IMG/VR virus record: IMGVR_UViG_3300028275_000006 | Coordinates: 1 to 64,000 of that record | DNA length: 64,000 nucleotides | Direction: 5' to 3' (one strand) | Shown: in pieces, positions 18,901 to 50,594 of the stretch | Layout of the letters: every line of letters begins with the position of its first letter | Position numbering within the stretch: position 1 is the first letter of the stretch | Made by a program: the position numbers and the translations under genes | The notes under the pieces: generated by a model | Told to the model about the DNA's origin: nothing | Database searches by the model: none | The model's input: only the letters and a program-made list of their open reading frames with translations

Positions 18901-21900
18901 TTAGTTGACTTCTCATATGAAATGAGTTTCATAGATATTGCTGTAGGCGATTTAGTAAAAATTAAAAATGAAAAATCTGGTGGTTGGATTCTTTTAGAAA
19001 GAATTAATACACTAGTTACAGATAACATTTCTTTAAATTACACAACAGTAGGTCGTCAAAACGGAACAATCCAATTCAATAGTAATTTGTACAAGTTTAC
19101 AAATAGTAATATTGGATTTGATAGTTTTACCTATGATGGCGATGTATACGACGACGAACCAAAAGAAGAATTAAGAATTATTCTCGATGTCATTAAAAAT
19201 AATTTATTAATAGACGATTTAGAAGTAGAGTATAATAAGTTATTCTTTGCAAGTCTGCGTTACGTATTCTCAGAACAAACATTTGTTGATTGGGCATTTA
19301 AGACTTCGTTCGTTAAGAGTCAACACAACCTTGGCGAATTAAAACAAAAAGTTAATTATAAAAATGACAATCTTGCTAGTTACGAAGAATACATTAATGA
19401 AGTAAAACCTTACAGAACTAAAGTTAGAGAATTTATCAGCAATTACACAGCAACTGATAATACATATACAGGAACTACAGACTTTGACCTTCCAGCACGT
19501 TATGATACTGAAGAAGGAAAAATTCTTCCGTTTGATGTAAAAGTCAATAATTCTGTAATTACATATAACTCATCTGCAATATTAAATGCACCATACAGTG
19601 ATTGGTTAGATCATGCTGGATATCGTGTTACAGAAATTGTTGTTGTTGACGGTGGCTCAGGATACCAAGCCGCACCTGCTGTTGAAGTAGTTGGTGTGTG
19701 CAAAACTAAAGCCACTGCTAAAGCGTATATTTCACAAGGATCAGTAACAAAGATTGCAGTAGAAACTAAAGGAGAAGGTTACCTAACTACACCTACTATA
19801 GTTATTAGCGGATCAGTTGGCGCAAGCGGAGTAACAGCCAAGGCTACAGCAATTCTTGGAGAAGGCGTTACAAGAACAAACACCATTGGTGTTAAATTTG
19901 ACAGAATTATTCCGGAGTATCAAGTAAGTTCTATTACAATGTCGCAGACATTCGATGGTACAGGATCTAGAACATTGTTCCAGTTAAACTGGCCTATTGA
20001 TATTAGAACAAACAAGACTGCGGTAACAGTATCTAACGAAGAATTATTGTCTAGTGATTTTACAGTTTATAATAAGAAAGATACTTCGTTAGGATATACA
20101 CGTTATATTGGTATATTAGAGTTATCTACTGCGGCAGAAGTTGGCAGTTCTAATATTACTGTAACTTATACTAAAGATATAAGACTTCTTACAGCCGCAG
20201 ATAGAATTCAATATTACTATAGTCCAATAACAGGACAGATTGGTAAAGACCTAGGACAGTTAATGTCTGGAGTTGACTACGGCGGCGTTGAAATTACAGG
20301 GCTAGGATTTGAAATAAGTTCTGGTTGGGACGGACTTCCATGGTTTACTGCTGGCTGGGACGACTTCGATGAAGATTATACAGACTTTTTAGTTGTATCA
20401 GATGGTACAACACGTTCTTATAATCTGCCATATATTCCTGCAGATGGAGAACAGATTAACGTTTATATTAATGGTGTAAGAATTGATGACATTAATTATG
20501 ACGTTTACACCAGTGCCGAAACTGCATATAATACCGCAGCCGCATTATTAGAAGTTTATACTGCTGAAGAGATTGCTCTACAAGCAGATAAAGACGCTAA
20601 AGAAATAACAGTTAATTCTCTAACACAAGAGCTTATTGATACACAGGCAGTTATTGCTGACTTACAAGCACAGTTAGAAATTACCTCCCCAAGCGATCCT
20701 TTATACTTTGCTTTACAAACTACATTGGCAGAAAATCAAGCACAGGAAACACAGTTAATTTCAGACTTGACCATTGCCCAAGGCGAACTAGACGATGCAG
20801 AAGCATTACTAACAGCCAAACAAGTACAAGTGGCTAACAAAACTCTTGATGTTGCCGCAAAGTTAGCAACATTAAATGCAACCGATGAAATTACAAATCC
20901 AGATGCACAGATGCAGACATTTGTAGGAGACGGAAGCACTGATACTCCTATAGTCATTCCTGCATACGTAGATGTAAACAGCGGAGATACTATTATCTTC
21001 CGTAAGAGTACCAGCGATGGTAGTTTTAGACCAAACCAGCAATATTTAGACTCTGAAATCAGCGGCGGAGATTTTACATATACTACTGCCCGAGGCATTC
21101 GTGCAGAAGACATCAATCTTGACGGCGACAATTTTGTAACACCAACTAACAGCCATGCACCGGAAGAAGTAGTTACGGGACAGGTTGTAGACTCTGTAGC
21201 AATTACAGTCTACCATACTGTAGAAGACGGTACACCTATTATTGTCACAAGACATTATATAACAACAGAGCCAGAAAACGAGTTCTTAATTGGACAGCGT
21301 CCAAACAGCACTCAAGCGGCAGTTGTTAAATTAAACGGATTAATTAAAAAGCAAGATGTAGATTATACACTAAATTACGCTATGCAAAAAGTTGTGTTCC
21401 CAACTAACTTGCCTGTGGGCAGTGAAGTTGTGATTACTTCTATGAGCAAAAACGGTACAAGCATTCTTGATTCCGATTCATTTACTGGCGATGGTGTTTC
21501 TGTAGATTTTGTAACAGTAGCACGTTGGGATGGAGATTATTCTGCACTAGTTACTGTTAACGGTGTACCAGCCACAGTAACAACATTTGTAACAGATAAT
21601 ACTTACAGCGAAGTTGGAAACATTGGAATTAGATTTGCTACAGCACCAGTCAATACGGCAATTATCGACTACACGATTATTGGTACAGCATTAAACACAG
21701 TAAGTCGTGTTTCAACAGAAACTGTTGTTTATGACGGCACAAGTCAGGTGTATAGTTTAACAAATACACCGGCCAACTTACGTCCGTTTGATAATAACGT
21801 ATTAGTTGAATATGCTGGAAGAATTTTACGTCCGGCAGATACTGTTTATTTTGATGTCGTAGGAACAGTTCGTACTTACACAGTAAGCACAGTTGACTAT

Positions 21901-37009: not shown

Positions 37010-37538
37010 TTGATAACCTGTGTTTCATTTCTATTTCTGTTTTAAACGGTCCTTCATACGGATAACGTTCGATAGTAATTAGTTTAGGACAGAAACTACG
37101 CACCCAACCTTTATCAAATTTAATAATATAATATCCGGCGCAGTAAACACTTTTAGATTTATTACTCTTTGTAAACAACGGTAAATGACGTTTAACATCG
37201 AATAACGGATTGTATGGAAGTGTGCTAGTTGGATAACCGTGTACTTCTAAATCTTCTTCGGACTTAACTTTCTTTTCTAAAGTTTTCTTTATAAAAAATT
37301 CAGGACCAAATCGTTCTACAATTTTCTTTTTTGTATCGAATGTAGTAATAGCATTTTTAGAACTAAAGATATATTTCTTTTGTTCGGTGATTTTTAATAC
37401 ACCTACTTTATTGCCATTTTCTTCTACTATCCAAAACTTACCATCGACTACGGGTTTGGCGTGTATCTCTGTCATATTAGGACTCCAACAATTTTCTGTT
37501 TTGTTTTCACAAGTATCTTCGTACTGGCAAATTTTCAT
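36996..37538 (-). CDS. hypothetical protein
   Basis: 180-aa ORF; the start may be at 37475 (MTEIH). Confidence 0.65.
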   Translation of the reverse strand: MKICQYEDTCENKTENCWSPNMTEIHAKPVVDGKFWIVEENGNKVGVLKITEQKKYIFSSKNAITTFDTKKKIVERFGPEFFIKKTLEKKVKSEEDLEVHGYPTSTLPYNPLFDVKRHLPLFTKSNKSKSVYCAGYYIIKFDKGWVRSFCPKLITIERYPYEGPFKTEIEMKHRLSNARK

Positions 37539-38503: not shown

Positions 38504-38952
38504 GAAACCTCAGACTTGCCTTCGGCAATCTTTTTAACATTAATAAATCCAGCACCTCTATCTGACATATCGATGCCCTCTTCGCTGGCTACATTTTTGC
38601 ATAGTTCTCTAAACCAACGATCCACAATTTCTTCATCAGGATCGCCATCAAATCCATAACCCGCTTGTTTTAATTGTACTACAAATTCATCGTTCCAGTC
38701 AATCTCGAAGAAACCATTCTTTAAGTTATCTTTATTGACATGTGTCTCCAAAACAGCGACCCAAGGTTCTCCTTTGGCTGTAGCACGGTCTTTTGGAGTC
38801 ATTTTAGCCAATTCTTCTTCGCGTTTGGCTACTGCTTCTTTGGCTGTTGCTTCTTCAGCACGGGCAAGTGCTTCTGCACGTTCTTTTTCTAGACGTTCTT
38901 TTTCTGCTTCTAATTTGTCTATGCCAAATAATTTTTTAATAATTGCTTTCAT
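38500..38952 (-). CDS. hypothetical protein with an N-terminal coiled coil
   Basis: Start moved to MKAIIKK after GGGGGA; acidic C-terminal domain. Confidence 0.65.
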   Translation of the reverse strand: MKAIIKKLFGIDKLEAEKERLEKERAEALARAEEATAKEAVAKREEELAKMTPKDRATAKGEPWVAVLETHVNKDNLKNGFFEIDWNDEFVVQLKQAGYGFDGDPDEEIVDRWFRELCKNVASEEGIDMSDRGAGFINVKKIAEGKSEVS

Positions 38953-39619
38953 GTTTCCCCCATACCCGCGATTGCGGATAAAAAAATGCGTTTTCGTTTT
39001 GCCCCATATCCCAAATAATACTGCCCATTGTATTTCTTTCATTTAGTGGCAACGATTGAATAAAAGTATTTGTACTATAACGAACACCTTTAGTTATTGG
39101 TTTAACTTCGTGTACCCAAAGAGGATCTGCTGGAAAAATCATAGCATCTCCTTTATTCAATTTAACTTCGTATCTGCCATTCCAAAAAGTAAATTCGCCA
39201 CCTTCATAGTCGTCATTTAATGAAATAGTACAACTGGCGTGAATCATTTCCTCCCAATCCACATGAGGATGTATCCATTCGCCGACTTCGTATTTCATAA
39301 GTCGGTGCATGTGGGAAAATCTTAAAGATTTTTTTAATGCTGTAGTGTGAAACGCTTTAAACTCTTCTAGATATGTTATCCAATCTTCGATAATTTTATT
39401 TGTATGATTATGTACTACTAAAAAGTTTTCTGTATCAGGAATTAACTCTACTCTTTTAAAAGTAGAAGTAGTCATTTTATTAGTTACGGCGTGTATGCAA
39501 CTTTCTTGAACCGCACTGGCAGAACGCAATTCGTATTCGTCAATTAACGAATTGCATTGGTCTTCTGTTAATGCGTTTCTAACAACAAAAATTAAATCGG
39601 ATAACTTTATATCTTCCAT
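38936..39619 (-). CDS. 2OG-Fe(II) oxygenase (prolyl-4-hydroxylase-like)
   Basis: HxD (HPHVD), LNDDYEGGEF, distal H (WVHEVKP) and R (GVRYS). Confidence 0.88.
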   Translation of the reverse strand: MEDIKLSDLIFVVRNALTEDQCNSLIDEYELRSASAVQESCIHAVTNKMTTSTFKRVELIPDTENFLVVHNHTNKIIEDWITYLEEFKAFHTTALKKSLRFSHMHRLMKYEVGEWIHPHVDWEEMIHASCTISLNDDYEGGEFTFWNGRYEVKLNKGDAMIFPADPLWVHEVKPITKGVRYSTNTFIQSLPLNERNTMGSIIWDMGQNENAFFYPQSRVWGKHESNY

Positions 39620-40483
39620 TTATGTTCCCCACTCATTTTTAAAGAGTGGAACTTGTAATCTATCGCTGTAGCGTAAACCGTTTTTCATTGCTAGTTCCGC
39701 TACACGCCTGTTGTTAAGAGTATAGACACTTTCAACGCCACCCACGGGCATAAGATATATAGGACCGGTAAAACCATTTTCTCTATAAATGTCAGCAGTT
39801 TCAATTGCTTCCTCCGCATCTTCTTCTGTGGCCACTACAAATTTAAGATATGTATGACCGTATTCTTCGTATTCACAAACTACGTCTGGACGAATTGCTT
39901 CGTGACGTTCTTCACCGGAGCAACTTAATTTAGCACTAACACTAAATGTAACTTCTCGCCAAAAATCTTTATCGCTGTGATATTTCCATGTGTGCAGATA
40001 TTGCTTGAACTCGTCGGTGAGTTTTTGAGTACCATTCGTTTCAAATGTAATCTCTTTTAAGTTTGTCATTTTTGGATGGTCGAGCAAGTCTGGATACGCT
40101 CGTTGCCATCCAAGCAAAGGTTCCCCTCCGGTAATGACCAAGTGTTCGTCTCGCCATTCGTTGAAGGGTAGAATCTCTGCGATCCTGTCTGCGATGGCGT
40201 CTGAAGTGAGCATTGGACTAAGATCCTTAAAGCGAGGATCCCAACTAGCATAACTATCACAGCCCGTAGATACCAAAGGAAGTTCTTCATATTTTTTATA
40301 TGGGGTTCGTTCATGTTGGATTGCAATATCTTCAACTTCTGTACTTAGTTCACCTTTTGGTAATCCAAAGCCAGCACATTTAAAGTTACAACCAAATGTT
40401 CTCAAGAAAACAGACGGTACACCCATGTAACGTCCTTCGCCTTGAATACTATAAAATAATTCTGCAATTTTTAATTTGCTCAT
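39620..40483 (-). CDS. queE: 7-carboxy-7-deazaguanine synthase (radical SAM)
   Basis: ELFYSIQGEG, VFLRTFGCN, VITGGEP, ETNGT, RLQVPL; the Cys motif is split by an insertion. Confidence 0.9.
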   Translation of the reverse strand: MSKLKIAELFYSIQGEGRYMGVPSVFLRTFGCNFKCAGFGLPKGELSTEVEDIAIQHERTPYKKYEELPLVSTGCDSYASWDPRFKDLSPMLTSDAIADRIAEILPFNEWRDEHLVITGGEPLLGWQRAYPDLLDHPKMTNLKEITFETNGTQKLTDEFKQYLHTWKYHSDKDFWREVTFSVSAKLSCSGEERHEAIRPDVVCEYEEYGHTYLKFVVATEEDAEEAIETADIYRENGFTGPIYLMPVGGVESVYTLNNRRVAELAMKNGLRYSDRLQVPLFKNEWGT

Positions 40484-41261: not shown

Positions 41262-41473
41262 TTGCATGTCTCCAACCATTTATCAAGAATATTTACAGCA
41301 TCATTGAAATCGATACCATATACTTCTGCACTGATAACATTGTCTTTGATTTGTATATCAAACGGAACAGTTCCGTTAAATCGAAAATCTTCGGGAACAT
41401 CTGTCTCTACAATATACTTGTGTAGATTTTTTGCTCTATTAATTAAATTAGTCGCCATGTCTACTGAATTCAT
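41258..41473 (-). CDS. hypothetical protein
   Basis: 71 aa, overlaps the folE stop codon. Confidence 0.55.
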   Translation of the reverse strand: MNSVDMATNLINRAKNLHKYIVETDVPEDFRFNGTVPFDIQIKDNVISAEVYGIDFNDAVNILDKWLETCK

Positions 41474-42168
41474 CTTGGTGCAAACTCCTGTTGTAGTTTA
41501 ATGTTATCAAAGAACTCTTTCTTTGTACCAGCATCGTCTTTGAACGCACCTTTAAGTACAGTAGTTTGAGTTAATGAACTATGTGCCATAATGCCACGAT
41601 TCTCACAGCATCCATGAACTGCCTGAATATAAACGCCAATATCACTTGCGCCAGTGGCCTTTTCAATTTCTCTGGCTATGTCGTTACACAATTCTTCCTG
41701 TAAGGTACCACGACGAGCGCACCATTGCGCGATTCGTGTGTATTTTGACAGCCCAATGAGTTTTTGGGCGGCGATGATTCCGATGTAGGCAACACCAGAA
41801 ACAGGCTGATGATGATGACTACACATACTACGAAGCTCACTCCTAACCACCAACATACCCTCATAACGATCTTCGCTATCGTTAGGAAACGCTGTTGCAT
41901 CTGGTGCTGGTTCATATCTTCCTGCCATTATTTCGTTAAAGTACATTTTTGCTAATCGTTTCGCTGTACCGTGCGAGTTAGGATCTGTCTCTCTGTCAAT
42001 AAGAAGTTTGTCTAAAACACTTTCAAATGCCTCAGTTGCTTCTTTGATTAGTTGTTCTTTGACTAGATCAGATTCGATGTATTCGCTGATGTTATCTCCT
42101 GCCCAGAATCTTTTTCCGTCTAGGACCATCTTTTCGCGAATCGCTTGTGCTAAATTTTTTTCTGACAT
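41470..42168 (-). CDS. folE: GTP cyclohydrolase I
   Basis: SMCSHH, GLSKYTRI, QEELC, HGCCENRGI. Confidence 0.95.
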   Translation of the reverse strand: MSEKNLAQAIREKMVLDGKRFWAGDNISEYIESDLVKEQLIKEATEAFESVLDKLLIDRETDPNSHGTAKRLAKMYFNEIMAGRYEPAPDATAFPNDSEDRYEGMLVVRSELRSMCSHHHQPVSGVAYIGIIAAQKLIGLSKYTRIAQWCARRGTLQEELCNDIAREIEKATGASDIGVYIQAVHGCCENRGIMAHSSLTQTTVLKGAFKDDAGTKKEFFDNIKLQQEFAPR

Positions 42169-42635: not shown

Positions 42636-42804
42636 TCCAAAGTTCTTGTGCTCTGCGCTTATAGTCTTCTAATTCCCACACGGCTAATTTTTCACGAAAT
42701 ACTTCTTCGCTTAATCCGTGCCAGCCGATACAGTCTCCTGTAGGACTACGACCACAACCGCAAGTTCCAATTTTCTTTCCTTCTTCAGGTACTCTTACTT
42801 GCAT
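42604..42804 (-). CDS. CDGSH-like Fe-S/zinc-finger protein
   Basis: CGCGRSPTGDCIGWH resembles C-x-C-x2-S-x5-C-D-G-S-H; likely start MQVRV. Confidence 0.55.
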   Translation of the reverse strand: MQVRVPEEGKKIGTCGCGRSPTGDCIGWHGLSEEVFREKLAVWELEDYKRRAQELWNDSCTSGRSE

Positions 42805-43168
42805 TTTTATAATTTCCTTTACTTGGTATAACGTGACGAACCCCGCCACGAGGGTCTTCCATATCACCCTTGCGTCTAGGGATCATGTGTATATGAGGAT
42901 ACATTACTGTTTGGCCAGCAGTCTCGCCACAGTTTTGTCCGACATTAAAAGCGTCCCAACGTTCAGATTGGACACCATCGAACCCGAACTTGTATGCTCC
43001 TTTGAAACATTCGACGATGTTGGTAAAACGTTCATAGGTTGGCACAAAAAGCAAATGTCCTTCCGTAACTGGGTAGGCATCGTTGAAGACCCAATAGTCT
43101 TTTGTTCTGTACTCGATACTAGTCCATGGTGCTCTGCGTTCATCTAGTGCCCTTTCTAAATCAGTCAT
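42785..43168 (-). CDS. HIT-family nucleotide hydrolase
   Basis: DAYPVTEGHLLFVP; GETAGQTVMYPHIHMIPRR.GD. Confidence 0.88.
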   Translation of the reverse strand: MTDLERALDERRAPWTSIEYRTKDYWVFNDAYPVTEGHLLFVPTYERFTNIVECFKGAYKFGFDGVQSERWDAFNVGQNCGETAGQTVMYPHIHMIPRRKGDMEDPRGGVRHVIPSKGNYKNASKST

Positions 43169-43716
43169 AACCAAAATTCTTCCCAAGGATAAACAAGCCA
43201 ACAATCTTCTTGTCGCTTGTCTACGGTCCAAACATGATAGTCTGGATCTTTAAACTCACTGCCGTAATTATGTGTTAATACAGCAAAACGAACATTGTCT
43301 CCCCATACTTGATTCCATGCTTCATCGTTAGGAAAACAACCACTGGGCCAATCTTTCTTAATCCAATTAAGAGTAGATCCTTGATCGTTAATATCGTCTA
43401 CAATTAAGATTTTCTTTTTAAGACGTTCTAAATGTTTGTGATCGCCCCAAATGTGCCTTTCGTCATTGGGAACAACTCCCAAGGCATCTTCGGCCATCCA
43501 AAGATTACTTTCGCAATCGTTTTTATTATCGCGAAGGCTGACATTAAGTGTGTGCATCTTAATGCCAGTATATTGACTTAGTAAGTTAGCCGGAACAAGA
43601 CCACCGCGTGTAATACCTACAATATAGTCAGGCCTCCAATTATGTTCAGACATTTGGCGAGCAATTTCTAAACATGCGCCTTCAACTTGTGACCAACTGT
43701 AGTATACTTTCTTCAT
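43165..43716 (-). CDS. type I phosphoribosyltransferase (purine/Gpt-like)
   Basis: IVGITRGGLVPA, PRPP-binding ILIVDDINDQGST, WLVYPWE. Confidence 0.88.
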   Translation of the reverse strand: MKKVYYSWSQVEGACLEIARQMSEHNWRPDYIVGITRGGLVPANLLSQYTGIKMHTLNVSLRDNKNDCESNLWMAEDALGVVPNDERHIWGDHKHLERLKKKILIVDDINDQGSTLNWIKKDWPSGCFPNDEAWNQVWGDNVRFAVLTHNYGSEFKDPDYHVWTVDKRQEDCWLVYPWEEFWL

Positions 43717-43949
43717 GCAGTTAACCCATAGGCCAATGATTGACATTCTTCTTTAGTCATAAAGAAATTATAAGTTTGTGTACCAACAACTTCACCGTCT
43801 TTAAGACTTTCTTGAACCATATCGATACTAAACAAACCTTTAGGGCTTAGTACTTCGTGTTTCTTTAATGTTAGCCTAAAACCGGCGTGTTCTTTGACAA
43901 CCATTTCTTTATAAGTATCTCTAACTGATTCATGTAGTTCCATCATCAT
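43713..43949 (-). CDS. hypothetical protein
   Basis: 78 aa, coupled to the PRTase start. Confidence 0.55.
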   Translation of the reverse strand: MMMELHESVRDTYKEMVVKEHAGFRLTLKKHEVLSPKGLFSIDMVQESLKDGEVVGTQTYNFFMTKEECQSLAYGLTA

Positions 43950-44382
43950 CTCCTTTAATTGCGTCCCACGTTCTATATTTGGCTAATGCCTTAATATAGT
44001 CATCATACATCTTTTTTAACTTTGGATGCTTCTTTTCTAGTTTAACATCTCGCTCGGGAATTTGCAAGACTTTTTCAATTGTGTTTAACCTTTCTTCTAG
44101 GTCAACACCATTTAATACCATTCGACCTTTAACTTCTAACTCCGGTGGATCGTTTTTGGCAACCATCACCGGATTGGTAGTAGGATTAGCCCAAGTTACA
44201 TTTGTACCTGTAGTATAAGTTAACGGCACAGATGTAGTGCCGGCTCCGGTTGAAATCGTATATCCACTGCCAGAGCCGCCTGTGCCGTTCGATACTAAAA
44301 CACTACCTGAACCGGCACCGGAACCTGCTATGCCGCCGGCTGTATTAAGTATTACGCTTCCGTGATTGTAAGTATAGCTCAT
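43930..44382 (-). CDS. hypothetical protein with a Gly/Thr-rich N-terminus and a helical C-terminus
   Basis: 150-aa ORF. Confidence 0.6.
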   Translation of the reverse strand: MSYTYNHGSVILNTAGGIAGSGAGSGSVLVSNGTGGSGSGYTISTGAGTTSVPLTYTTGTNVTWANPTTNPVMVAKNDPPELEVKGRMVLNGVDLEERLNTIEKVLQIPERDVKLEKKHPKLKKMYDDYIKALAKYRTWDAIKGDDDGTT

Positions 44383-44800
44383 TTGGTATCCATTTATTAT
44401 TAACGAGAAATCCCCATTCTCTCTTTTGCGGACCTGGCATAAAAAGTGTCCAACACTCTACGTTGGGATCAATTTCAATTCTATGAAAACTGTTGGCACT
44501 ACAAATTCTAAAGTGTCCAGGCTTTCTCCATTTGGCAATTTCACAGACCTTTACTCCCTGGCTGTTAAATTGAGGAATCCATTCCCAATAGCCACCTTTT
44601 AGAATAAGTGTGGCATAAGGCCATGGGTGATCATGCACATCATCTGGATCACCTTTATGAAACTTGTGTAAGAATACATTAAATGGAAACCATTTACGAT
44701 CCTTTAAAAATAGATAATAACGTGTAAGTAACGGCTCGTCACAGGTACGATCCATAATAATACGCTTGCGACCGAGACGTTCTAACAGTTTTAATATCAT
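44345..44800 (-). CDS. cupin-fold protein
   Basis: HDHPWP...LKGGYWE and distal FHRIE: the H-x-H...E...H metal site. Confidence 0.75.
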   Translation of the reverse strand: MILKLLERLGRKRIIMDRTCDEPLLTRYYLFLKDRKWFPFNVFLHKFHKGDPDDVHDHPWPYATLILKGGYWEWIPQFNSQGVKVCEIAKWRKPGHFRICSANSFHRIEIDPNVECWTLFMPGPQKREWGFLVNNKWIPNELYLQSRKRNT

Positions 44801-45870
44801 ACAAGTCTTTCTAAGAGTCCATTTGCAGAAAAGAAATTTTCAGTTAAGTCTTGAGTTTGTTTTCTAAGTTGTGGTAAAAACTTTTCATAGTTATCCATAT
44901 ACTGGATAATCTTTGCACATATTTCTGGACGGTGTGCTTTATATGCTTCGAAACTTTCAGTCCATTCACTAGGATACTTAAAAGTATCATAGCCCATTTC
45001 ACTGTAACTAAGTCTATCTGGCACCATAGGAATAGCATCTACAACAGCGCCTTCATACCAACTAATCCCTAATGTCTCTTGTAAGTTTGCAGAGAACACT
45101 AATTTCGATTCGCCTAACAAGTTATGATATTCATTTTTTGTTAGTTGTTGATCCTGACAGACTACGAACTCGTACTGTGGCAAGTGTTCTTTTAAATCTC
45201 TAAAAATTTCAACTTGCTTCTCGGGTGCGATGCGATGAGGGAAAAGAATTAAATCACGTTTTTTCATCCCTTTATATGGAGTTAATGTATCTTCCATATA
45301 CTCCATTGGCCAACCTGTGCGTACAATTTTTCCTTTATCGATATATGATGCTTTTGCAGTATCGTAATCTATGTTTAAAAGATTATGACAAAACATTTCA
45401 ATATGGAATGTTGTAGCAAAGTAGTTATGATCTATAGCATGAAAGAAACTCTTTTCAGCATTTCTGACCCAAGGAGCATCGCCAATTAGACGACCTAAAA
45501 AGTCCTGTGGATCGTAACTACCGGCATGCCATAGTGCGTGAATAGTTACAGGAATCTGTAACAGTTCACTCATATACTTTAGGTTGATGATACCAGGGTG
45601 CCAAGCATCAGTAAAGATGAAGTGATCATTAGGAGCCACTGATCCGGCGCAAAACAACCTACCCATTTGCTCAACTTGAGCAGACTTGTATATATTGGTG
45701 CCACCAAAATTAAGAAAAGCACCAGGAGTAGTGGCTGAAGGAATATCCGTAGGCCCAGATAAAACTTGAACATCGTGTCCTCTCTTTCTCAGGATAGCCG
45801 GTAGGTGGGTCTTCCACTGCGCTGTATAGCGTGTTTCTACCGGCTCAAGGTCTACTAAGTAGACGGTCAT
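44797..45870 (-). CDS. GT-B glycosyltransferase (GT4-like)
   Basis: LFPHRIAPEK; EX7E motif ETLGISWYE; IPMVPDRLSYSE. Confidence 0.82.
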   Translation of the reverse strand: MTVYLVDLEPVETRYTAQWKTHLPAILRKRGHDVQVLSGPTDIPSATTPGAFLNFGGTNIYKSAQVEQMGRLFCAGSVAPNDHFIFTDAWHPGIINLKYMSELLQIPVTIHALWHAGSYDPQDFLGRLIGDAPWVRNAEKSFFHAIDHNYFATTFHIEMFCHNLLNIDYDTAKASYIDKGKIVRTGWPMEYMEDTLTPYKGMKKRDLILFPHRIAPEKQVEIFRDLKEHLPQYEFVVCQDQQLTKNEYHNLLGESKLVFSANLQETLGISWYEGAVVDAIPMVPDRLSYSEMGYDTFKYPSEWTESFEAYKAHRPEICAKIIQYMDNYEKFLPQLRKQTQDLTENFFSANGLLERLV

Positions 45871-46100
45871 TGGCGACCATTCCTGTAGTTGTTATTGTAC
45901 CCGTTGTTATTACGGGGACGATTTTCAAATCGTCTGTCGTTGTTATAACGACGAGGACGCTTAGACGCCTCGTAAGCCTGCCAAGTTTTACTTTGGCGGT
46001 TATACAAGTCTGCCTCATTGTAAGGCAGAAGGTTGAATCTGCAAAAATCTAGCAGATTGTCAAGATCGTCAAAAATTTGAACGACTTCTTTTTTCATCAT
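45867..46100 (-). CDS. small protein with an Arg/Asn-rich tail
   Basis: C-terminal RPRRYNNDRRFENRPRNNNGYNNNYRNGRQ. Confidence 0.6.
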   Translation of the reverse strand: MMKKEVVQIFDDLDNLLDFCRFNLLPYNEADLYNRQSKTWQAYEASKRPRRYNNDRRFENRPRNNNGYNNNYRNGRQ

Positions 46101-46108
46101 TGTTTCCT

Positions 46109-46504
46109 TTAGTATTTGATGAATGAACCATTTTCTCCGTCTTCGGAGACCTCAATCCAAATCTCGCGATTTGGATACTTCTTGCTAATGATGTCATGTA
46201 ATTCGTCAGACATCATTTCACAACTCTTGTAGTCAAGGCTTATAGTGGCACCTTGACCATTATACAACGACTCGAGCCATCGTTTGAATTGGATGAATTC
46301 GATGTCCCTGTCATTGTGTTGCACACTGATCCACACCCTGAAATGAAAGATGTGGCGATGAGGGTGACCCAAAAACGATACGTCATATTCGTCTCCTGTT
46401 GCTAGATTAGGATCTGTTAGTGCCGCAGGATACTTATGGATACCTTCTTTGCGGAAAGTTACCCAGATCATTTTGTTTGGTCTAATGTCTTGTTTGATAA
46501 TCAT
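46109..46504 (-). CDS. dpdL: QueD-paralogous T-fold protein, DpdL-like
   Basis: LGHPHRHIF (LxxxHRHxF in place of QueD CxxxHGH), SCEMMS, VSEDGENG; start at MIIKQ (ATGA overlap). Confidence 0.65.
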   Translation of the reverse strand: MIIKQDIRPNKMIWVTFRKEGIHKYPAALTDPNLATGDEYDVSFLGHPHRHIFHFRVWISVQHNDRDIEFIQFKRWLESLYNGQGATISLDYKSCEMMSDELHDIISKKYPNREIWIEVSEDGENGSFIKY

Positions 46505-47040
46505 GTTGGTGTATCTTGAGTGTACAAATCCCAATGAGTATACTTGTCTTTAGTCATTAGGCTTTGTAAATGATGTGTCCACACACCTGGATTTGTAGCA
46601 CCCCAAGTTCGGTCATCCAGTTTGAGTGTGGCATTGTAGTTGAGTTGATTAATGTAGGGTAACTTGACACTAATCATAGGTACAAACTTGGGATATTCGT
46701 TATAAGCAGACTCTAGTACGCCTTCGATGTGTTCAACACCAAAGTCTAGAGCTACCCAATAGCCTGCTTTTAGACAGCCTATAATAACTTCGTCCCATGC
46801 TTTGTATTCTTCGTGTGAAATACTTTTAGGATTAAAACTTTGACTAGTGCCAAAGTAAATTTGTTTAATGCGTTTGTTTTCGTCTAAGTATGCTTGTGTG
46901 TCACCAGCAATACGTAGTATTTCTTCTAGCGGAGGAGTGCCTACTACAAATAGTGTATACATACCATAGCAAATAGTATGTTCGACTTCGTAGCCTGTAA
47001 AGTAGACAATGTCTTGTCTTTCTTCAGTGTTTAATCCCAT
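46501..47040 (-). CDS. uncharacterised alpha/beta protein inside the deazaguanine cluster
   Basis: 179 aa; TLFVVG, IYFG, LKLDD...ATNPGVW; no family recognised. Confidence 0.7.
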   Translation of the reverse strand: MGLNTEERQDIVYFTGYEVEHTICYGMYTLFVVGTPPLEEILRIAGDTQAYLDENKRIKQIYFGTSQSFNPKSISHEEYKAWDEVIIGCLKAGYWVALDFGVEHIEGVLESAYNEYPKFVPMISVKLPYINQLNYNATLKLDDRTWGATNPGVWTHHLQSLMTKDKYTHWDLYTQDTPT

Positions 47041-47921
47041 TTAATATAACCTCTGCTATAACCATTTGGACGATCCACACCATCCGCAAATGCTTGTTGC
47101 CATTCTGTGTTACGATTATAACCTTTTGTCCAGAAAGAATCAACCTCTAGTTTACCGTTTTCAATCATCCAACGTGCTTCAAACATAGCACCAATAAATT
47201 CTTCTGTTCTTGGACTTGGTTTAACTGTAGTAACAGCCTTCCAAAGTTGTTGTTGTGCTTCTTCTTTACTTACTGCTTTACCAACAGCATCAATGATTAC
47301 TGCATTGTTATTTAGATTAATGTCGGTACCTAGTTGATATTTTCCAGATAAATCTACTATCAAATCGTAACTGTCGGTAGTACCTAACAGTAACGCATCT
47401 CCCCAAAGTTCCTGATTACTAGAACCTAGTACATCTACTTCAAGTTCTGGAAAATGATGTGCCAGGTTATTAAAAACTACCCATGCAAGGAAACCACTAC
47501 CTAGGATTAAGCATTTACCATTTTGTCTACGTTCAAAAAGAGTATACGCTTGTCTAATACAGTTAACACCACAGGCCACTGGTTCTAAAATGTAACGTGG
47601 ATGTAGTTCTAAAACTGTTACAAACTCACCGTCACGACAGTTGTAATAATCTGCGTATGCTGGTTCGCCGCGGGTAGCAACATAATCGCCTACTTTAACA
47701 CCTAATACACTGGCACCGACTTTAGTTACGATTCCTAGACCTTCGTGACCTTGCATGTGTAGTGGTAAAGGTCCAAAGTTGCCCTGCATCATATCTATGT
47801 CACTGCGACATACACCAGTCATAACTGCTTTAACTTCAATTTCAGTTGACGTAGGTTCTGGCTTTGCATATTCTACTTCTTCAAAGTAACCTTGTCCAGT
47901 TGTTTGTAGACAGCGTGTCAT
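47031..47921 (-). CDS. zinc-dependent medium-chain dehydrogenase (MDR)
   Basis: GVCRSD, GHEGLG, EPVACG, LILGSG; structural-zinc Cys lobe absent. Confidence 0.88.
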   Translation of the reverse strand: MTRCLQTTGQGYFEEVEYAKPEPTSTEIEVKAVMTGVCRSDIDMMQGNFGPLPLHMQGHEGLGIVTKVGASVLGVKVGDYVATRGEPAYADYYNCRDGEFVTVLELHPRYILEPVACGVNCIRQAYTLFERRQNGKCLILGSGFLAWVVFNNLAHHFPELEVDVLGSSNQELWGDALLLGTTDSYDLIVDLSGKYQLGTDINLNNNAVIIDAVGKAVSKEEAQQQLWKAVTTVKPSPRTEEFIGAMFEARWMIENGKLEVDSFWTKGYNRNTEWQQAFADGVDRPNGYSRGYIKWD

Positions 47922-48796
47922 AGTTTTTCTATTCTTTCGTGTATCCAAAGGTCAATTTCTAACTGTACTTTCCAGTACTCGTCATTATTTAGGTTTTCTA
48001 CAGCATCTTTAATCATATTTAGGTACGCTTCTTCTGGACACCAGCCTAACTCAAATACATCTTTGGTATTATCTTGATTAATAAATGTAATAGCACTACG
48101 TTCAACAGTCATACTGCGCCAGTTAGCACGGCAGTTCCATTTAGAACCAAATCCAATGTGACACTGGTCGTCTACATCATAAGTTCCATTTGGGTTTACA
48201 GTACCATACTCTGTGCTTTCGATATCTTTTAACAGCCATGATTGTATAGATGATTCGCCGTTAACTTTTTCTATGCGCCAGTCTGGATGTAGTGCAATAT
48301 ACAAACTTAATAAGTGTGGCATTAAGTCCCTACTAACTCCGCCAAATGCTAGTTTGCGTGTAGTAAACCAACTACCTGGGCTAGGAATACAGTTCTTTCT
48401 AATCCATTCGATGTCTACATTCTTTGCTACTTTAGCCTTTTCCTGTAATTCTGCAATATTGTCACGCCACATATTATTTTTAACCATCATAAATCGTGTG
48501 CGTGGAAATCTTTTACATAATTTAGCCCATTCGTTTCTATTAATCAGTCCAGGCTTTTCAATAAAGACAATTTTACTGATAGGAGCCAGTTTAACGGCTA
48601 ATTCTAAATGCGTAAAATTTGGTGTGCAAATATGTACGGTGTCAAAAGACCCGTGAAGTAATATGGCTGGTTCTATACTAGGGAAGTCGGCATTTTTATT
48701 AATGTCTGTATCGACAGTACAAACTTCATAACCTAATTGAGTTAGGACAGATTTATATAACTGTCCTATTCCCATTCCTACAACTAAACTTTTCAT
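47918..48796 (-). CDS. Gfo/Idh/MocA-family oxidoreductase
   Basis: VVGMGIG, ICTPNFTH, FIEKPG, GGVSRDLMPH. Confidence 0.85.
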   Translation of the reverse strand: MKSLVVGMGIGQLYKSVLTQLGYEVCTVDTDINKNADFPSIEPAILLHGSFDTVHICTPNFTHLELAVKLAPISKIVFIEKPGLINRNEWAKLCKRFPRTRFMMVKNNMWRDNIAELQEKAKVAKNVDIEWIRKNCIPSPGSWFTTRKLAFGGVSRDLMPHLLSLYIALHPDWRIEKVNGESSIQSWLLKDIESTEYGTVNPNGTYDVDDQCHIGFGSKWNCRANWRSMTVERSAITFINQDNTKDVFELGWCPEEAYLNMIKDAVENLNNDEYWKVQLEIDLWIHERIEKL

Positions 48797-49050
48797 CTAT
48801 ATGTTGGTAGTTCGTTAACACATTTAATAAGAGATCCGGATTGTTTGCCCGCTAATTGATGTAGCGCATAATCCGGAGAGGATACACAGGCTTCGTGCCC
48901 ATTGAATTTATCTGCTAGGGCAATGGTGTTGCCAGTTTCTGCAAATTTAATTACAAGATAGTAGTCGTTTGGACCCACGGCATCTGCCGTTTTATAAAAC
49001 AAACCAAAACTTAATACTGCTAAAACACCAATGCCTAGTAGTTTTTTCAT
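48793..49050 (-). CDS. small exported protein
   Basis: Signal peptide MKKLLGIGVLAVLSFG..ADA; two Cys. Confidence 0.6.
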   Translation of the reverse strand: MKKLLGIGVLAVLSFGLFYKTADAVGPNDYYLVIKFAETGNTIALADKFNGHEACVSSPDYALHQLAGKQSGSLIKCVNELPTYR

Positions 49051-50594
49051 TTTACGCCTTCTTCGAGTTCGTCAAGTTTAGCAATTTCATCATCGGTAAA
49101 TTCTTCACCGTGCTCTAATTGTACACTCTCTTCCTCTACTTCGTCAAACAGTTTGGCAAATTGTGTACTTGCGTTTACAGTCTTCTTACCTACTGCTCCG
49201 CGAGTTCCAATAATACTTTGCCAAAATTTATTATACTCTTCAACGACTTTGTCTGCTTCTGCACGACTACTAGTAGCAAAAATGGCTTCTACTACATCTT
49301 TAAAGAATAGTCTATCAAACCGTTCTTCTACTAACATAGCAGGAACAATGCCCAAATCGTATTGACGATTGGCTTCTTGTACAGCATTAATGTGCATCCA
49401 AACATTATGGCCCATTAAGATAGCGTAACTAAAACTATCCCACGAAGTTTTACCTTCCTTGCCAATCTTGTTTAGATCCCCGGGCCCGTAAATACAAACA
49501 TCTTTAATTTGAACCCCGTCAATAATTGGACTATTGTCAAAGTTTTTAAAATGTCCGTCCTGTACTACTGCATCGCGGAATAGTCTAGTATCTTTACTAT
49601 ATTTTTTATTATCGATACTAGGTAACATTCTATATACCCACTTAGTTCTGTCTTGTGTTTCTGTTTGAACGTATACTTGTCCGTTTGCAGTTGCTAAGAA
49701 TGGACTAGCACAGTCGAAACTAATTGTAAAGTTAGGATTGTGATACTTGCGTACAGCACGTTGAATGTCTGTTAATAAACAAGCCCACTCTAATTTACTA
49801 GTACCTAAGAAGTGCATCCAGTCTTGTTTGCCCTGTTCAAGTAATCCGTCAAATCGTAATGCTACTAGGCGTTTTAATACCAAGTGTACATCACACATAT
49901 TCTGACCACCCATGGCCCAACCGTTAAATGCACGGTCACCGTAGACAGTAGGATCGCAGTACTTCTTCATTCGGTCATACCAATCGTCTGCATCGGTATG
50001 ATTTTCACCTTGGAGAACGTTTAAGAATTTACAATTACCATTGCGATTGTTTACAAACCAATCGTTGTTAATGTAAGTACCTTGAACTGCTTCTGCGTAT
50101 GTAGTAATGCCTGTGGCTTTTTGTCCAGCAGGGCTACGAGCTACCCAAGCAGGGATATCAAGACACATACCATAGTCCATTAGACTATCCATCCACTTAA
50201 GAACCTGTTCACGTTTCTTTTGTGCTTTAGGACAGTTGGGATTCTTCCAATCGCCTTCCCATACACCTTTACCAATTTGGAAACCACCGGAGTCGCCTAG
50301 TACCCAACTAGTACTGCGATCTCTATTACGAAACATATCTTCGCTGTGATCAACTTTGTTAAGGTCTAGATTAGCATGACCTGCACTATACAAGCAGTGG
50401 TCATAGTAGAACGCACCTTTTTCCGGTTCTAAGTAGTTTAGACTTTCTACTCCGTTTTTAAAACTAGCAGGAACTCTTGCCGGATCAACATAGTTTCCAT
50501 ATCTTTGTTTACCTATAAAGGTACTATAGAAACCGCTAGTTGCCGGCAAAAAGTATGCGTAGTCGTTTTGTGTTGCGGTTAAATTTTTATTCAT
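49047..50594 (-). CDS. dpdA: TGT-fold guanine transglycosylase, DpdA-like (7-deazaguanine insertion)
   Basis: TGT barrel motifs in order: LGDSGGFQ, CLDIP, NVLQG, WAMGG, MHFLG, SFDCASP; no CxCxxC zinc site of tRNA TGTs. Confidence 0.82.
   Translation of the reverse strand: MNKNLTATQNDYAYFLPATSGFYSTFIGKQRYGNYVDPARVPASFKNGVESLNYLEPEKGAFYYDHCLYSAGHANLDLNKVDHSEDMFRNRDRSTSWVLGDSGGFQIGKGVWEGDWKNPNCPKAQKKREQVLKWMDSLMDYGMCLDIPAWVARSPAGQKATGITTYAEAVQGTYINNDWFVNNRNGNCKFLNVLQGENHTDADDWYDRMKKYCDPTVYGDRAFNGWAMGGQNMCDVHLVLKRLVALRFDGLLEQGKQDWMHFLGTSKLEWACLLTDIQRAVRKYHNPNFTISFDCASPFLATANGQVYVQTETQDRTKWVYRMLPSIDNKKYSKDTRLFRDAVVQDGHFKNFDNSPIIDGVQIKDVCIYGPGDLNKIGKEGKTSWDSFSYAILMGHNVWMHINAVQEANRQYDLGIVPAMLVEERFDRLFFKDVVEAIFATSSRAEADKVVEEYNKFWQSIIGTRGAVGKKTVNASTQFAKLFDEVEEESVQLEHGEEFTDDEIAKLDELEEGVK

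What the first reader, a model, noticed from the sequence alone, without database searches (positions are those of the whole stretch)
46109..46504. DpdL-type T-fold protein, with no QueC, QueF or canonical QueD in the window
Seen: LGHPHRHIF, i.e. LxxxHRHxF in place of the QueD CxxxHGH motif; no SGGLDS-type QueC motif in any listed ORF. As I recall, DpdL was proposed to decarboxylate CDG to 7-deazaguanine in dDG-containing phages. Inference: the pathway branches at CDG rather than preQ0, and the QueD step comes from the host or a gene outside the window.
Basis: partly seen in the sequence, partly recalled or inferred. Interest (0 to 1): 0.62.

Follow-up and report, generated by a model that had tools for sequence, protein, structure and literature searches.

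The report
DpdL-type QueD paralogue in river phage
This gene in an uncultured river jumbo phage is a clear member of the DpdL family, the QueD-like protein proposed (never shown) to turn 7-carboxy-7-deazaguanine into the 7-deazaguanine that some phages put into their DNA in place of guanine; the call is correct but fits the pattern published in 2023.

Summary
Window 46109..46504 (-) encodes a 131-aa protein with LGHPHRHIF. The motif occurs once in 212 kb, against 0.02 expected per shuffled window.

The protein is 57% identical to the Acidovorax phage ACP17 DpdL and 34% identical to the founding DpdL, Cellulophaga phage phiST CGPG_00067. Its model (pLDDT 89.5) is a T-fold closest to QueD/PTPS. 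It keeps the metal-binding His triad and two Glu of QueD but lacks the catalytic Cys.

The contig also carries:
- FolE and QueE;
- a 515-aa TGT-fold DpdA-like protein;
- a canonical QueD (CxxxHGH) at about 97 kb, outside the window.

QueC and QueF are absent, as they are from ten large or complete DpdL phage records.

This gene set is the one published in 2023, so this is a new member of a known but biochemically unproven family. Three things appear new:
- a conserved module around dpdL: a GT-B glycosyltransferase-like gene, an unknown 179-aa gene and a large TGT-like gene;
- a DpdL-kinase fusion elsewhere;
- very high abundance in metagenomes.

The exact substrate and the final DNA base remain inferred.

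The parts
46109..46504 (-). dpdL: 131-aa QueD-like T-fold protein with LxxxHRHxF
   Evidence: It is homologous to the ACP17 and phiST DpdL proteins. The AF2 model has pLDDT 89.5. Structural matches: PTPS Z 11.9, E. coli QueD Z 10.8. Invariant across 39 diverse homologues: H23, L45, H49, R50, H51, H63, R66, E69, E96, E121.
46501..47040 (-). Conserved 179-aa gene of unknown function, translationally coupled to dpdL (homologue of ACP17 gp122)
   Evidence: Present next to dpdL in 77 of 80 close IMG/VR relatives. About 26-29% identical to ACP17 gp122. No Pfam, PHROG, NCBIfam, PDB-profile or Atlas family.
45867..46100 (-). Small conserved 77-aa gene between dpdL and the GT-B gene
   Evidence: Present in 76 of 80 close relatives. 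No family found.
44797..45870 (-). 357-aa GT-B (GT4-like) glycosyltransferase-like gene, conserved partner of dpdL
   Evidence: Present in 76 of 80 close relatives. Also lies next to or near dpdL in Phosso, PA5oct gp167, ACP17 gp124, Xanthomonas X1 and BUDD, Synechococcus BUCT-ZZ01 and Burkholderia BCSR5. Homologues give sub-threshold Glycos_transf_1 hits. An Atlas neighbour cluster carries PF00534. The family profile hits the GT4 enzyme WlaC, 6eji, at E 0.002.
49047..50594 (-). 515-aa TGT-fold protein, the candidate DNA transglycosylase (DpdA-like)
   Evidence: No Pfam TGT hit. AF2 pLDDT 85.8. Foldseek PDB top hits are Z. mobilis TGT (prob 1.0, E 1e-7). BFVD hits include phage TGT/DpdA proteins and phiST M4SLA5, the DpdA3 founder. 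Invariant GDSGGFQ, LQG, HFLG and SFD-AS motifs. hhalign gives 91.6% to the ACP17 gp123 family.
47031..47948 (-). Zn-ADH-like oxidoreductase (accessory, not core)
   Evidence: PF08240 at E 5e-12. Present in only 16 of 80 close relatives.
47918..48796 (-). GFO/IDH/MocA-type oxidoreductase (accessory, not core)
   Evidence: PF01408 at 25.8 bits. Present in 16 of 80 close relatives, always together with the ADH-like gene.
41470..42168 (-). FolE, GTP cyclohydrolase I (first step of the pathway)
   Evidence: PF01227 at E 1.4e-38; phrog_2197.
39620..40483 (-). QueE-like radical SAM enzyme (CPH4 to CDG)
   Evidence: phrog_2076 'QueE-like radical SAM domain' at E 2e-54. The Radical_SAM Pfam hit is sub-threshold.
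43165..43746 (-). Purine (xanthine/guanine-type) phosphoribosyltransferase-like gene inside the cluster
   Evidence: PF00156 at E 2e-13; NF006613 at E 1.4e-12, below its cut-off. Present in 49 of 80 close and 14 of 41 diverse dpdL loci.
42785..43231 (-). HIT-family nucleotide hydrolase/transferase-like gene inside the cluster
   Evidence: PF01230 at 32.8 bits; HinT-like.
44345..44800 (-). 151-aa protein matching a PHROG annotated 'cysteine dioxygenase', inside the cluster
   Evidence: phrog_4786 at E 4.6e-35. Present in 57 of 80 close relatives. A cupin fold was not tested here.

Best explanation
The gene encodes a member of the DpdL family, a QueD/PTPS-type T-fold protein. It keeps the three metal-binding histidines (H23, H49, H51) and the two glutamates that hold the 2-amino-4-oxo-pyrimidine ring (E96, E121). 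It has lost the catalytic cysteine of QueD (Leu45 in its place) and the Asp-His dyad. It has gained family-invariant R50, H63, R66 and E69. It works in a phage-encoded pathway: GTP -> H2NTP (FolE) -> CPH4 (canonical QueD at about 97 kb) -> CDG (QueE). With no QueC, the pathway cannot go on to preQ0. DpdL most likely removes the 7-carboxyl group of CDG to give 7-deazaguanine, and the 515-aa TGT-fold protein then exchanges that base for guanine in phage DNA, protecting it from restriction. Shown here: family membership, fold, retained and lost residues, gene content and conserved synteny. Taken from the literature: dDG replaces all dG in phiST, and PA5oct DNA, which carries the same module, resists enzymes with G in their sites. 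Inferred: the decarboxylation itself, its substrate form (free base, nucleotide or DNA-bound), metal use, a role of R50/R66 in binding the carboxylate, and the final base in this phage. My confidence is about 0.95 that it is a DpdL family member and about 0.5 that it is a CDG decarboxylase acting on the free base.
For: Homology to the named DpdL proteins: together with the paper text. The motif is unique in the record and the gene is under purifying selection. The model has pLDDT 89.5. The best structural matches are PTPS and QueD: Foldseek prob 1.0, and Z 11.9 and 10.8 at 18% identity. Alignment with E. coli QueD pairs H16/H31/H33 with H23/H49/H51, C27 with L45, and the two Glu with E96 and E121. 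Eighteen positions are invariant in 39 sequences spanning 34-98% identity. FolE and QueE are in the window and QueD is at 97 kb. QueC and QueF are absent from the record. Ten of ten other large DpdL-bearing records have QueD and no QueC above cut-off, including five complete cultured phages and IMG/VR records that are 90% and 100% complete. A TGT-fold partner is present. The synteny pol - clamp - TGT-like - o179 - dpdL - GT-B - ... - FolE - QueE is kept in dozens of relatives. PA5oct, which has the same module, has DNA resistant to several enzymes in a pattern that suggests a modified G (PMC12191111).
Against: No enzyme assay of any DpdL exists. The authors' co-expression of dpdL and dpdA from phiST and ACP17 in E. 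coli gave no dDG. Pfam and NCBIfam QueD/PTPS models do not match the protein, and hhalign against a small set of phage QueDs reaches only 53-64% probability. By fold alone other T-fold families score nearly as well (DHNA Z 10.6). The record is about 55% complete, so a QueC in the missing part cannot be excluded for this exact phage. The conserved GT-B and o179 partners, the PRTase and HIT genes, and a DpdL-kinase fusion in another clade are not explained by the simple free-base model.
Confidence: 0.55

Rival explanations
1. DpdL is the decarboxylase but does not act on the free base. CDG is first attached to a sugar, either as a (deoxy)ribonucleotide made by the cluster's purine PRTase-like enzyme or as dCDG already inserted into DNA by the TGT-like protein. 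DpdL then decarboxylates that form.
For: A 193-aa purine PRTase-like gene and a HIT-family gene sit inside the cluster and recur in distant dpdL loci. In tubercidin biosynthesis the 194-aa PRTase TubE is CDG-specific and decarboxylation follows ribosylation (PMC6112128). In IMG/VR loci L123-L127, DpdL is fused to an AAA_18 P-loop kinase-like domain homologous to phiST CGPG_00066, which fits work on nucleotides. The paper itself allows that DpdA3 may insert CDG. dpdL plus dpdA alone gave no dDG in E. coli.
Against: phiST and ACP17 show no PRT193 homologue in the fetched loci, so the PRTase is not universal. The PRTase may simply salvage the guanine released by base exchange. The authors' model of phiST DpdL favoured the free base. 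No dCDG was detected in phiST DNA.
Confidence: 0.22
2. In this clade the DpdL module makes something other than plain 7-deazaguanine. DpdL would perform a different transformation of CDG, or merely bind it, and the conserved GT-B glycosyltransferase-like protein and the 179-aa protein would complete a further-decorated 7-deazaguanine.
For: The GT-B gene lies next to or near dpdL in phages whose DpdLs are only 36-66% identical, and it always accompanies the large TGT-like types, never the short phiST DpdA3. o179/gp122 is likewise conserved. The base in PA5oct, ACP17 and this clade has never been identified chemically. [quoted passage not shown]
Against: phiST, which lacks the GT-B gene in the fetched locus, has DpdL and 100% dDG. 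DpdL's invariant residues are the same across both groups. DG has no obvious acceptor group for a sugar. The GT-B assignment rests on sub-threshold matches.
Confidence: 0.15
3. The protein is just a divergent, redundant QueD (CPH4 synthase).
For: It has a QueD-like fold and retains the His triad and the Glu residues. PA5oct carries two canonical PF01242 paralogues, so QueD duplication does occur in these phages.
Against: The catalytic Cys is replaced by an invariant Leu, and the Asp-His dyad is missing. QueD is reported inactive without that Cys. A canonical QueD is always co-encoded. QueD HMMs do not match it.
Confidence: 0.03

Closest known systems
DpdL (proposed CDG decarboxylase) of Cellulophaga phage phiST (CGPG_00067) and Acidovorax phage ACP17 (gp125), Cui et al., NAR 2023 (PMC10516641)
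   Same: Homologous over the full length: 34% identity to phiST and 57% to ACP17. Same LxxxHRHxF signature, same retained His and Glu residues, same size (115-131 aa). Same genomic logic: FolE + QueD + QueE + TGT-like protein, no QueC.
   Different: The host phage is an uncultured riverine jumbo-type phage. The TGT-like partner is a 515-aa type shared with PA5oct and Phosso, not the 259-aa phiST DpdA3. The gene is flanked by a GT-B-like gene and a 179-aa gene, as in ACP17 and PA5oct but not phiST. phiST instead has an AAA_18 kinase-like neighbour and a MazG.
QueD, 6-carboxy-5,6,7,8-tetrahydropterin synthase (E. coli, PDB 4ntk) and PTPS
   Same: Same T-fold (Z 10.8, rmsd 2.6 A over 108 residues). 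Zn-ligand His triad and the two substrate-anchoring Glu are conserved.
   Different: About 18% identity; not matched by PF01242 or TIGR03367. Catalytic Cys27 is replaced by Leu. The Asp70-His71 dyad is absent. New invariant Arg and His residues are present. A true QueD is encoded elsewhere on the contig.
TubE/TubF steps of tubercidin biosynthesis (CDG-specific PRTase, then UbiD-family decarboxylase), PMC6112128
   Same: The same chemical problem, removal of the 7-carboxyl of CDG after FolE, QueD and QueE. A similar-sized purine PRTase-like gene is in the cluster.
   Different: The decarboxylase there is a prFMN/UbiD enzyme unrelated to T-folds, and the product is a free nucleoside antibiotic, not a DNA base. 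No homology between PRT193 and TubE was tested.
DpdA/TGT transglycosylases (bacterial TGT, phage DpdA1-4)
   Same: The 515-aa neighbour has the TGT fold and TGT-like DSGGFQ, QG, HxLG and FD(C) motifs.
   Different: It is not detected by Pfam TGT and is much larger than phiST DpdA3. Its subfamily is undetermined: hhalign gives 91.6% to the ACP17 gp123 type but only 31% to phiST DpdA3.

Membership tests
DpdL (Cui et al. 2023) | Sequence homology to the founding member phiST CGPG_00067 and to ACP17 DpdL | tested here: met
   tblastn against 2.3 Gb of phage records gives E 6e-9 (34% identity, 92% coverage) to CGPG_00067 and E 2e-36 (57% identity) to ACP17 gp125.
DpdL (Cui et al. 2023) | Signature LxxxHRHxF in place of the QueD CxxxHGH | tested here: met
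   L45-GHP-H49-R50-H51-I-F53. L, H, R, H and F are invariant in 39 of 39 diverse homologues. The motif is unique in the 212 kb.
DpdL (Cui et al. 2023) | QueD-like T-fold keeping three His and two Glu, with the fourth His displaced | tested here: met
   AF2 pLDDT 89.5. Top matches are QueD and PTPS. Alignment with E. coli QueD shows H23/H49/H51 and E96/E121 conserved. H63 lies in a different position from QueD H71.
DpdL (Cui et al. 2023) | Phage encodes DpdA, FolE, QueD and QueE but not QueC | tested here: met
   Caveat: the record is about 55% complete. The same pattern holds in ten other large or complete DpdL records.
DpdL (Cui et al. 2023) | Converts CDG to DG; phage DNA contains dDG | not testable with these tools
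   Needs an enzyme assay and LC-MS/MS of virion DNA. Not demonstrated for any DpdL so far.
QueD / CPH4 synthase (PF01242, TIGR03367) | Match to the family HMM above cut-off | tested here: not met
   No PF01242 or TIGR03367 hit even at E 0.1. The six-frame genome search finds only the 97-kb gene.
QueD / CPH4 synthase (PF01242, TIGR03367) | CxxxHGH with catalytic Cys, plus the Asp-His dyad | tested here: not met
   Leu is at the Cys position and no DH dyad is at the aligned position.
QueD / CPH4 synthase (PF01242, TIGR03367) | Zn-binding His triad on a T-fold | tested here: met
DpdA / TGT superfamily (for the 515-aa neighbour) | TGT TIM-barrel fold with catalytic Asp motifs | tested here: met
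   Foldseek prob 1.0 and E 1e-7 to Z. mobilis TGT. BFVD hits to phage TGT/DpdA proteins, including phiST DpdA3. D101 (DSGGFQ) and D294 (SFD) are invariant.
DpdA / TGT superfamily (for the 515-aa neighbour) | Match to Pfam TGT PF01702, or assignment to a named DpdA subfamily | tested here: not met
   No PF01702 match in the record at E<=10. hhalign gives only 31% to the phiST DpdA3 family and 91.6% to the ACP17 gp123 type. The subfamily is left open.

The most novel reading that the evidence does not exclude
In the large group of phages that includes this one, PA5oct, ACP17 and Phosso, dpdL may work only as part of a conserved four-gene module: a large TGT-like protein, the 179-aa protein, DpdL and a GT-B glycosyltransferase-like protein. 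That would explain why dpdL plus dpdA alone failed in E. coli. The DNA base made by the module may then be a further-decorated 7-deazaguanine rather than plain dDG.
Probability: 0.2. Interest if true: 0.7.

Novelty: new member of a known kind. Interest (0 to 1): 0.36.

Why it matters
7-Deazaguanine replacement of guanine is one of the few phage DNA modifications that can reach 100% substitution, and DpdL is the one step of that route with no biochemical proof.

This window adds no new chemistry, but it shows three things:
- DpdL is not a curiosity of a few cultured phages. At least 8,000 clusters at 90% identity and about 600 or more IMG/VR loci carry it, and it is common in river metagenomes.
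- Its active-site signature is strictly conserved across 34-98% identity.
- In most lineages it travels with a GT-B-like gene, a 179-aa unknown and a large TGT-like protein, and in one lineage it is fused to a P-loop kinase.

These partners are concrete candidates for the 'other unknown enzymes' that the original authors invoked after their reconstitution failed.

Tried and rejected
- **Near-identical DNA in GenBank phages:** no match.
- **Family scans of DpdL:** Pfam and NCBIfam gave only chance-level hits. PHROG 17812 has no annotated function.
- **Sequence and profile searches of DpdL against PDB sequences:** no QueD hit.
- **hhalign of DpdL alignments against four phage QueDs:** only 53-64% probability, partly misaligned. 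I relied on the fold instead.
- **BLASTP of the 515-aa protein against phiST DpdA3 and ACP17 gp123:** not significant. Resolved by fold and profile comparison.
- **IMG/VR scan with phiST DpdL alone:** found nothing.
- **The 179-aa protein:** no family by Pfam, PHROG, NCBIfam, Atlas features or PDB profile.
- **Laying RNA-labelled runs:** identical contigs are present, but they are contigs and their depth profile resembles that of the DNA run, so I claim no transcription.
- **Rejected reading, 'ordinary QueD':** the catalytic Cys and the DH dyad are absent and a true QueD is co-encoded.
- **Rejected reading, 'QueD must come from the host':** it is on the contig.

Not run:
- The large representative-protein search, because the operators marked it costly and the protein was not left open.
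- Complex prediction, because I make no binding claim.

No alternative genetic code was used.

Full report
**1. The observation**

Window 46109..46504 (-) is an ORF of 131 codons. Its ATG overlaps the stop codon of the upstream gene (ATGA), which is typical of translational coupling. A TTG 30 nt upstream would give 141 aa, but homologues are 129-132 aa.

- The peptide LGHPHRHIF is there. LxxxHRHxF occurs once in all six frames of the 212,542-bp record, while a shuffled window gives 0.02 on average.
- Against eight relatives, pN/pS is 0.14-0.20, so this is a real gene under purifying selection.
- No SGGxDS motif occurs in any frame of the record.
- The Pfam models for QueC (PF06508) and QueF (PF14489) find nothing even at E<=10, while they hit most control genomes.
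- Inside the window there is no CxxxHGH and no PF01242 match.

**2. What the protein is**

Standard family libraries do not name it: Pfam and NCBIfam give only noise, and PHROG 17812 is 'unknown function'.

tblastn against GenBank phages finds 28 records.
- The best hits are Sinorhizobium phage Phosso (66%), Rhizobium phage RHph_I1_18 (59.5%), Acidovorax phage ACP17 (57%, E 2e-36) and the PA5oct group of Pseudomonas jumbo phages (53-54%).
- At 34% identity (E 6e-9) come Cellulophaga phage phiST and its kin.
- The phiST hit is CGPG_00067, next to the MazG-like CGPG_00068. The ACP17 hit is gp125, next to QueE.

Cui et al. (NAR 2023, PMC10516641) named exactly CGPG_00067 DpdL. They describe the change of the QueD signature CxxxHGH to LxxxHRHxF and report that they also expressed the ACP17 dpdL.

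**3. Fold and residues**

I built an alignment of 39 non-redundant homologues (34-98% identity to the window protein) taken from IMG/VR loci. With it, AlphaFold2 gives a model with mean pLDDT 89.5 and a beta-beta-alpha-alpha-beta-beta layout.

- Foldseek's best PDB matches are E. coli QueD (4ntk, prob 1.0, TM 0.61-0.68) and archaeal PTPS.
- VIA-align gives Z 11.9 for P. horikoshii PTPS and 10.8 for E. coli QueD (rmsd 2.6 A over 108 residues, 18% identity).
- Other T-fold families follow closely: DHNA up to Z 10.6, and uricase, QueF-like and FolE at Z 9-10.

The fold therefore says 'T-fold', and the residues say 'QueD branch'. In an alignment with E. coli QueD:
- QueD H16, H31 and H33 pair with H23, H49 and H51.
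- QueD C27 pairs with L45.
- The 'TSE' and 'KET' glutamates pair with E96 and E121.
- The QueD D70-H71 dyad has no counterpart.

Across the 39 sequences G21, H23, P26, A28, L45, H49, R50, H51, F53, H63, R66, E69, F70, S94, E96, E121, D122 and E124 are invariant. PA5oct alone among the cultured set has F instead of R50. This agrees with the published description: three His and two Glu shared, the fourth His displaced, the Cys lost.

I infer, without a test, that the invariant R50 and R66 are candidates for holding the 7-carboxylate.

**4. The pathway around it**

The window is the first 64 kb of an IMG/VR virus record that CheckV rates as about 55% complete. On the same strand as dpdL lie:
- QueE (39620..40483);
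- FolE (41470..42168);
- a HIT-family gene;
- a purine PRTase-like gene;
- a gene matching a PHROG annotated 'cysteine dioxygenase'.

The 515-aa gene at 49047..50594 has no Pfam TGT match, but several lines make it a TGT-superfamily, DpdA-like transglycosylase:
- It carries invariant GDSGGFQ, LQG, HFLG and SFD-AS motifs.
- It folds (pLDDT 85.8) into a structure whose best PDB matches are all Z. mobilis tRNA-guanine transglycosylase (prob 1.0, E 1e-7).
- Its BFVD matches include phage TGT/DpdA proteins and phiST M4SLA5, the DpdA3 founder.
- Profile comparison links it to the ACP17 gp123 family (91.6%) and only weakly to phiST DpdA3 (31%).

Its subfamily remains undetermined.

The canonical QueD is not in the window. 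It sits at G000 96983..97540 (-): 185 aa, PF01242 at 93.9 bits, C-RHL-HGH motif, and E 2e-47 to the PTPS-like PDB entry 3jyg.

The gene set FolE + QueD + QueE + DpdA-like + DpdL without QueC is, word for word, the pattern by which the authors picked DpdL.

**5. Is the absence of QueC an artefact of incompleteness?**

Probably not.
- Five larger IMG/VR relatives (214-417 kb, two of them 90% and 100% complete) all have a PF01242 QueD and no QueC above cut-off. One has two sub-threshold PP-loop hits of 15.7 and 20.9 bits.
- Five complete cultured DpdL phages (Phosso at 469 kb, RHph_I1_18, PA5oct, ACP17, phiST) also all have QueD and no QueC at E<=1.
- The three close relatives extend differently around dpdL. 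If the genomes are collinear, they and this record together span roughly 330 kb of an estimated 380 kb. This is my arithmetic from the contig ranges and the completeness.

**6. Conserved neighbourhood**

In 80 close IMG/VR relatives the order is: DNA polymerase - clamp - TGT-like - [GFO/IDH/MocA + Zn-ADH-like, only 16 of 80] - 179-aa gene (77 of 80) - dpdL - 77-aa gene (76 of 80) - 357-aa gene (76 of 80) - phrog_4786 gene - PRTase - HIT - FolE - QueE.

The 357-aa protein looks like a GT-B glycosyltransferase:
- GenBank annotators call its homologues 'glycosyltransferase (family 4)'.
- Homologues give sub-threshold Glycos_transf_1 hits.
- A related Atlas cluster carries PF00534.
- A family profile hits the GT4 enzyme WlaC at E 0.002.

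It lies next to or within a few kb of dpdL in Phosso, PA5oct (gp167), ACP17 (gp124), Xanthomonas X1 and BUDD, Synechococcus BUCT-ZZ01 and Burkholderia BCSR5. It also does so in several diverse uncultured loci. It was not found in the phiST-type loci.

The 179-aa protein is homologous to ACP17 gp122 and has no recognisable family.

DpdL thus comes with three kinds of TGT-like partner:
- the 515-aa type;
- the ACP17 gp123 type;
- the short phiST DpdA3 type.

The GT-B gene accompanies only the first two.

**7. How it most likely works**

Best supported is the published model. FolE, QueD and QueE make CDG. DpdL, a metal-dependent T-fold enzyme that has exchanged QueD's Cys/Asp/His machinery for Arg/His/Glu residues, removes the carboxyl group. 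The TGT-like enzyme then swaps the resulting 7-deazaguanine for guanine in DNA.

Support from experiments elsewhere:
- phiST DNA has dG fully replaced by dDG.
- PA5oct DNA, from a phage with this module, resists several restriction enzymes in a pattern that suggests a modified G, and is targeted by nucleases specific for modified G (PMC12191111).

Against it:
- No DpdL has ever been assayed.
- dpdL plus dpdA of phiST and ACP17 gave no dDG in E. coli.

I put about 0.95 on family membership and about 0.5 on 'CDG decarboxylase acting on the free base'.

**8. Rivals**

- **(a) Decarboxylation after attachment to a sugar (nucleotide or DNA).** Suggested by the PRTase and HIT genes, by the tubercidin precedent in which a 194-aa PRTase is CDG-specific and decarboxylation follows (PMC6112128), and by a DpdL fusion described in section 9. 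Alternatively, the PRTase may simply recycle the guanine released by base exchange back to GMP and GTP, the pathway's own precursor. That is my inference.
- **(b) A different end product in the GT-B-bearing lineages.**
- **(c) A redundant QueD.** This is very unlikely, given the lost catalytic residues and the co-encoded true QueD.

**9. Things seen in passing**

- In IMG/VR loci L123-L127, DpdL is fused in one 305-aa ORF to an AAA_18 P-loop kinase-like domain (PF13238, 31.9 bits). That domain is homologous (E 3e-15) to phiST CGPG_00066, the gene between dpdL and dpdA3, which is itself AAA_18 (29.8 bits).
- The family is very abundant. The word search hit its ceiling of 8,000 clusters at 90% identity, all with E<=0.001.
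- The exact locus is held by riverine metagenome runs of 24 studies, including libraries labelled metatranscriptomic. The laid contigs do not show transcription.

**10. Comparison with the known, and novelty**

This is a new member of a known, predicted family, found in exactly the published genomic context. It is not a new kind of system.

To my knowledge, and after a search of the held literature, four points have not been described:
- the conserved GT-B and 179-aa partners;
- the three alternative TGT-like partners;
- the kinase fusion;
- the scale of the family in freshwater viromes.

They matter mainly as leads for finally reconstituting the dDG pathway.

**11. Limits**

- The function rests on homology, fold, residue conservation and gene context only.
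- The large representative search was deliberately not used.

Noticed in passing
L125:5971-6885 (also L123, L124, L126, L127; IMG/VR sample 3300045988): DpdL is fused in one 305-aa ORF to an AAA_18 P-loop kinase-like domain. That domain is homologous (29% identity, E 3e-15) to phiST CGPG_00066, the gene between dpdL and dpdA3, which is itself AAA_18. A phiST-type DpdA3 follows directly. This is a Rosetta-stone link between DpdL and a kinase-like protein.
   Followed up: partly
window 44797..45870 (-): A GT-B (GT4-like) glycosyltransferase-like gene is a conserved neighbour of dpdL in phages whose DpdLs are only 36-66% identical: Phosso, PA5oct gp167, ACP17 gp124, Xanthomonas X1 and BUDD, BUCT-ZZ01 and BCSR5. 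It was not found in phiST-type loci. Its substrate is unknown.
   Followed up: partly
window 46501..47040 (-): A 179-aa protein, translationally coupled to dpdL, is conserved in 77 of 80 relatives and homologous to ACP17 gp122. No method tried recognised a family.
   Followed up: partly
window 47031..48796 (-): A Zn-ADH-like gene and a GFO/IDH/MocA-like oxidoreductase are inserted between the TGT-like gene and the 179-aa gene. The pair is present in only 16 of 80 close relatives, always together, so it is an accessory cassette of unknown role.
   Followed up: partly
window 42785..43746 (-): A HIT-family gene and a xanthine/guanine-type PRTase-like gene sit inside the deazaguanine cluster. The PRTase recurs in distant dpdL loci. 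It could salvage excised guanine or, as with TubE in tubercidin synthesis, ribosylate CDG.
   Followed up: partly
window 38936..39619 (-): A 2OG-Fe(II) oxygenase (PF13640, E 2e-11) lies directly downstream of QueE.
   Followed up: no
window 9907..23991 (+): A single ORF of 4,694 codons, flanked by other large + strand ORFs, presumably a giant structural or tail-fibre-type protein. Not examined.
   Followed up: no
L002, L003, L006 and loci L087-L127: DpdL travels with three very different TGT-like partners: a 515-540-aa type (this window, PA5oct gp168, Phosso), a roughly 424-aa ACP17 gp123 type, and the 259-aa phiST DpdA3 type. None is matched by Pfam TGT.
   Followed up: partly
NC_071039.1 (PA5oct) 169215-169715 and 171534-171944: PA5oct has two canonical PF01242 QueD/PTPS paralogues 2 kb apart, in addition to its DpdL.
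   Followed up: no
G004 (record behind L090) 37223-37531 and 252618-252836: Two sub-threshold QueC-model hits (20.9 and 15.7 bits, N-terminal PP-loop region only) fall in 381-aa and 358-aa ORFs of a 417-kb DpdL phage. They are probably other PP-loop ATPases and were not examined.
   Followed up: no
window 44797..50594: The locus is held almost word for word by riverine metagenome runs of 24 studies, including six libraries labelled metatranscriptomic. Summed contig depth peaks over dpdL because many related strains share it. Transcription is not shown.
   Followed up: partly
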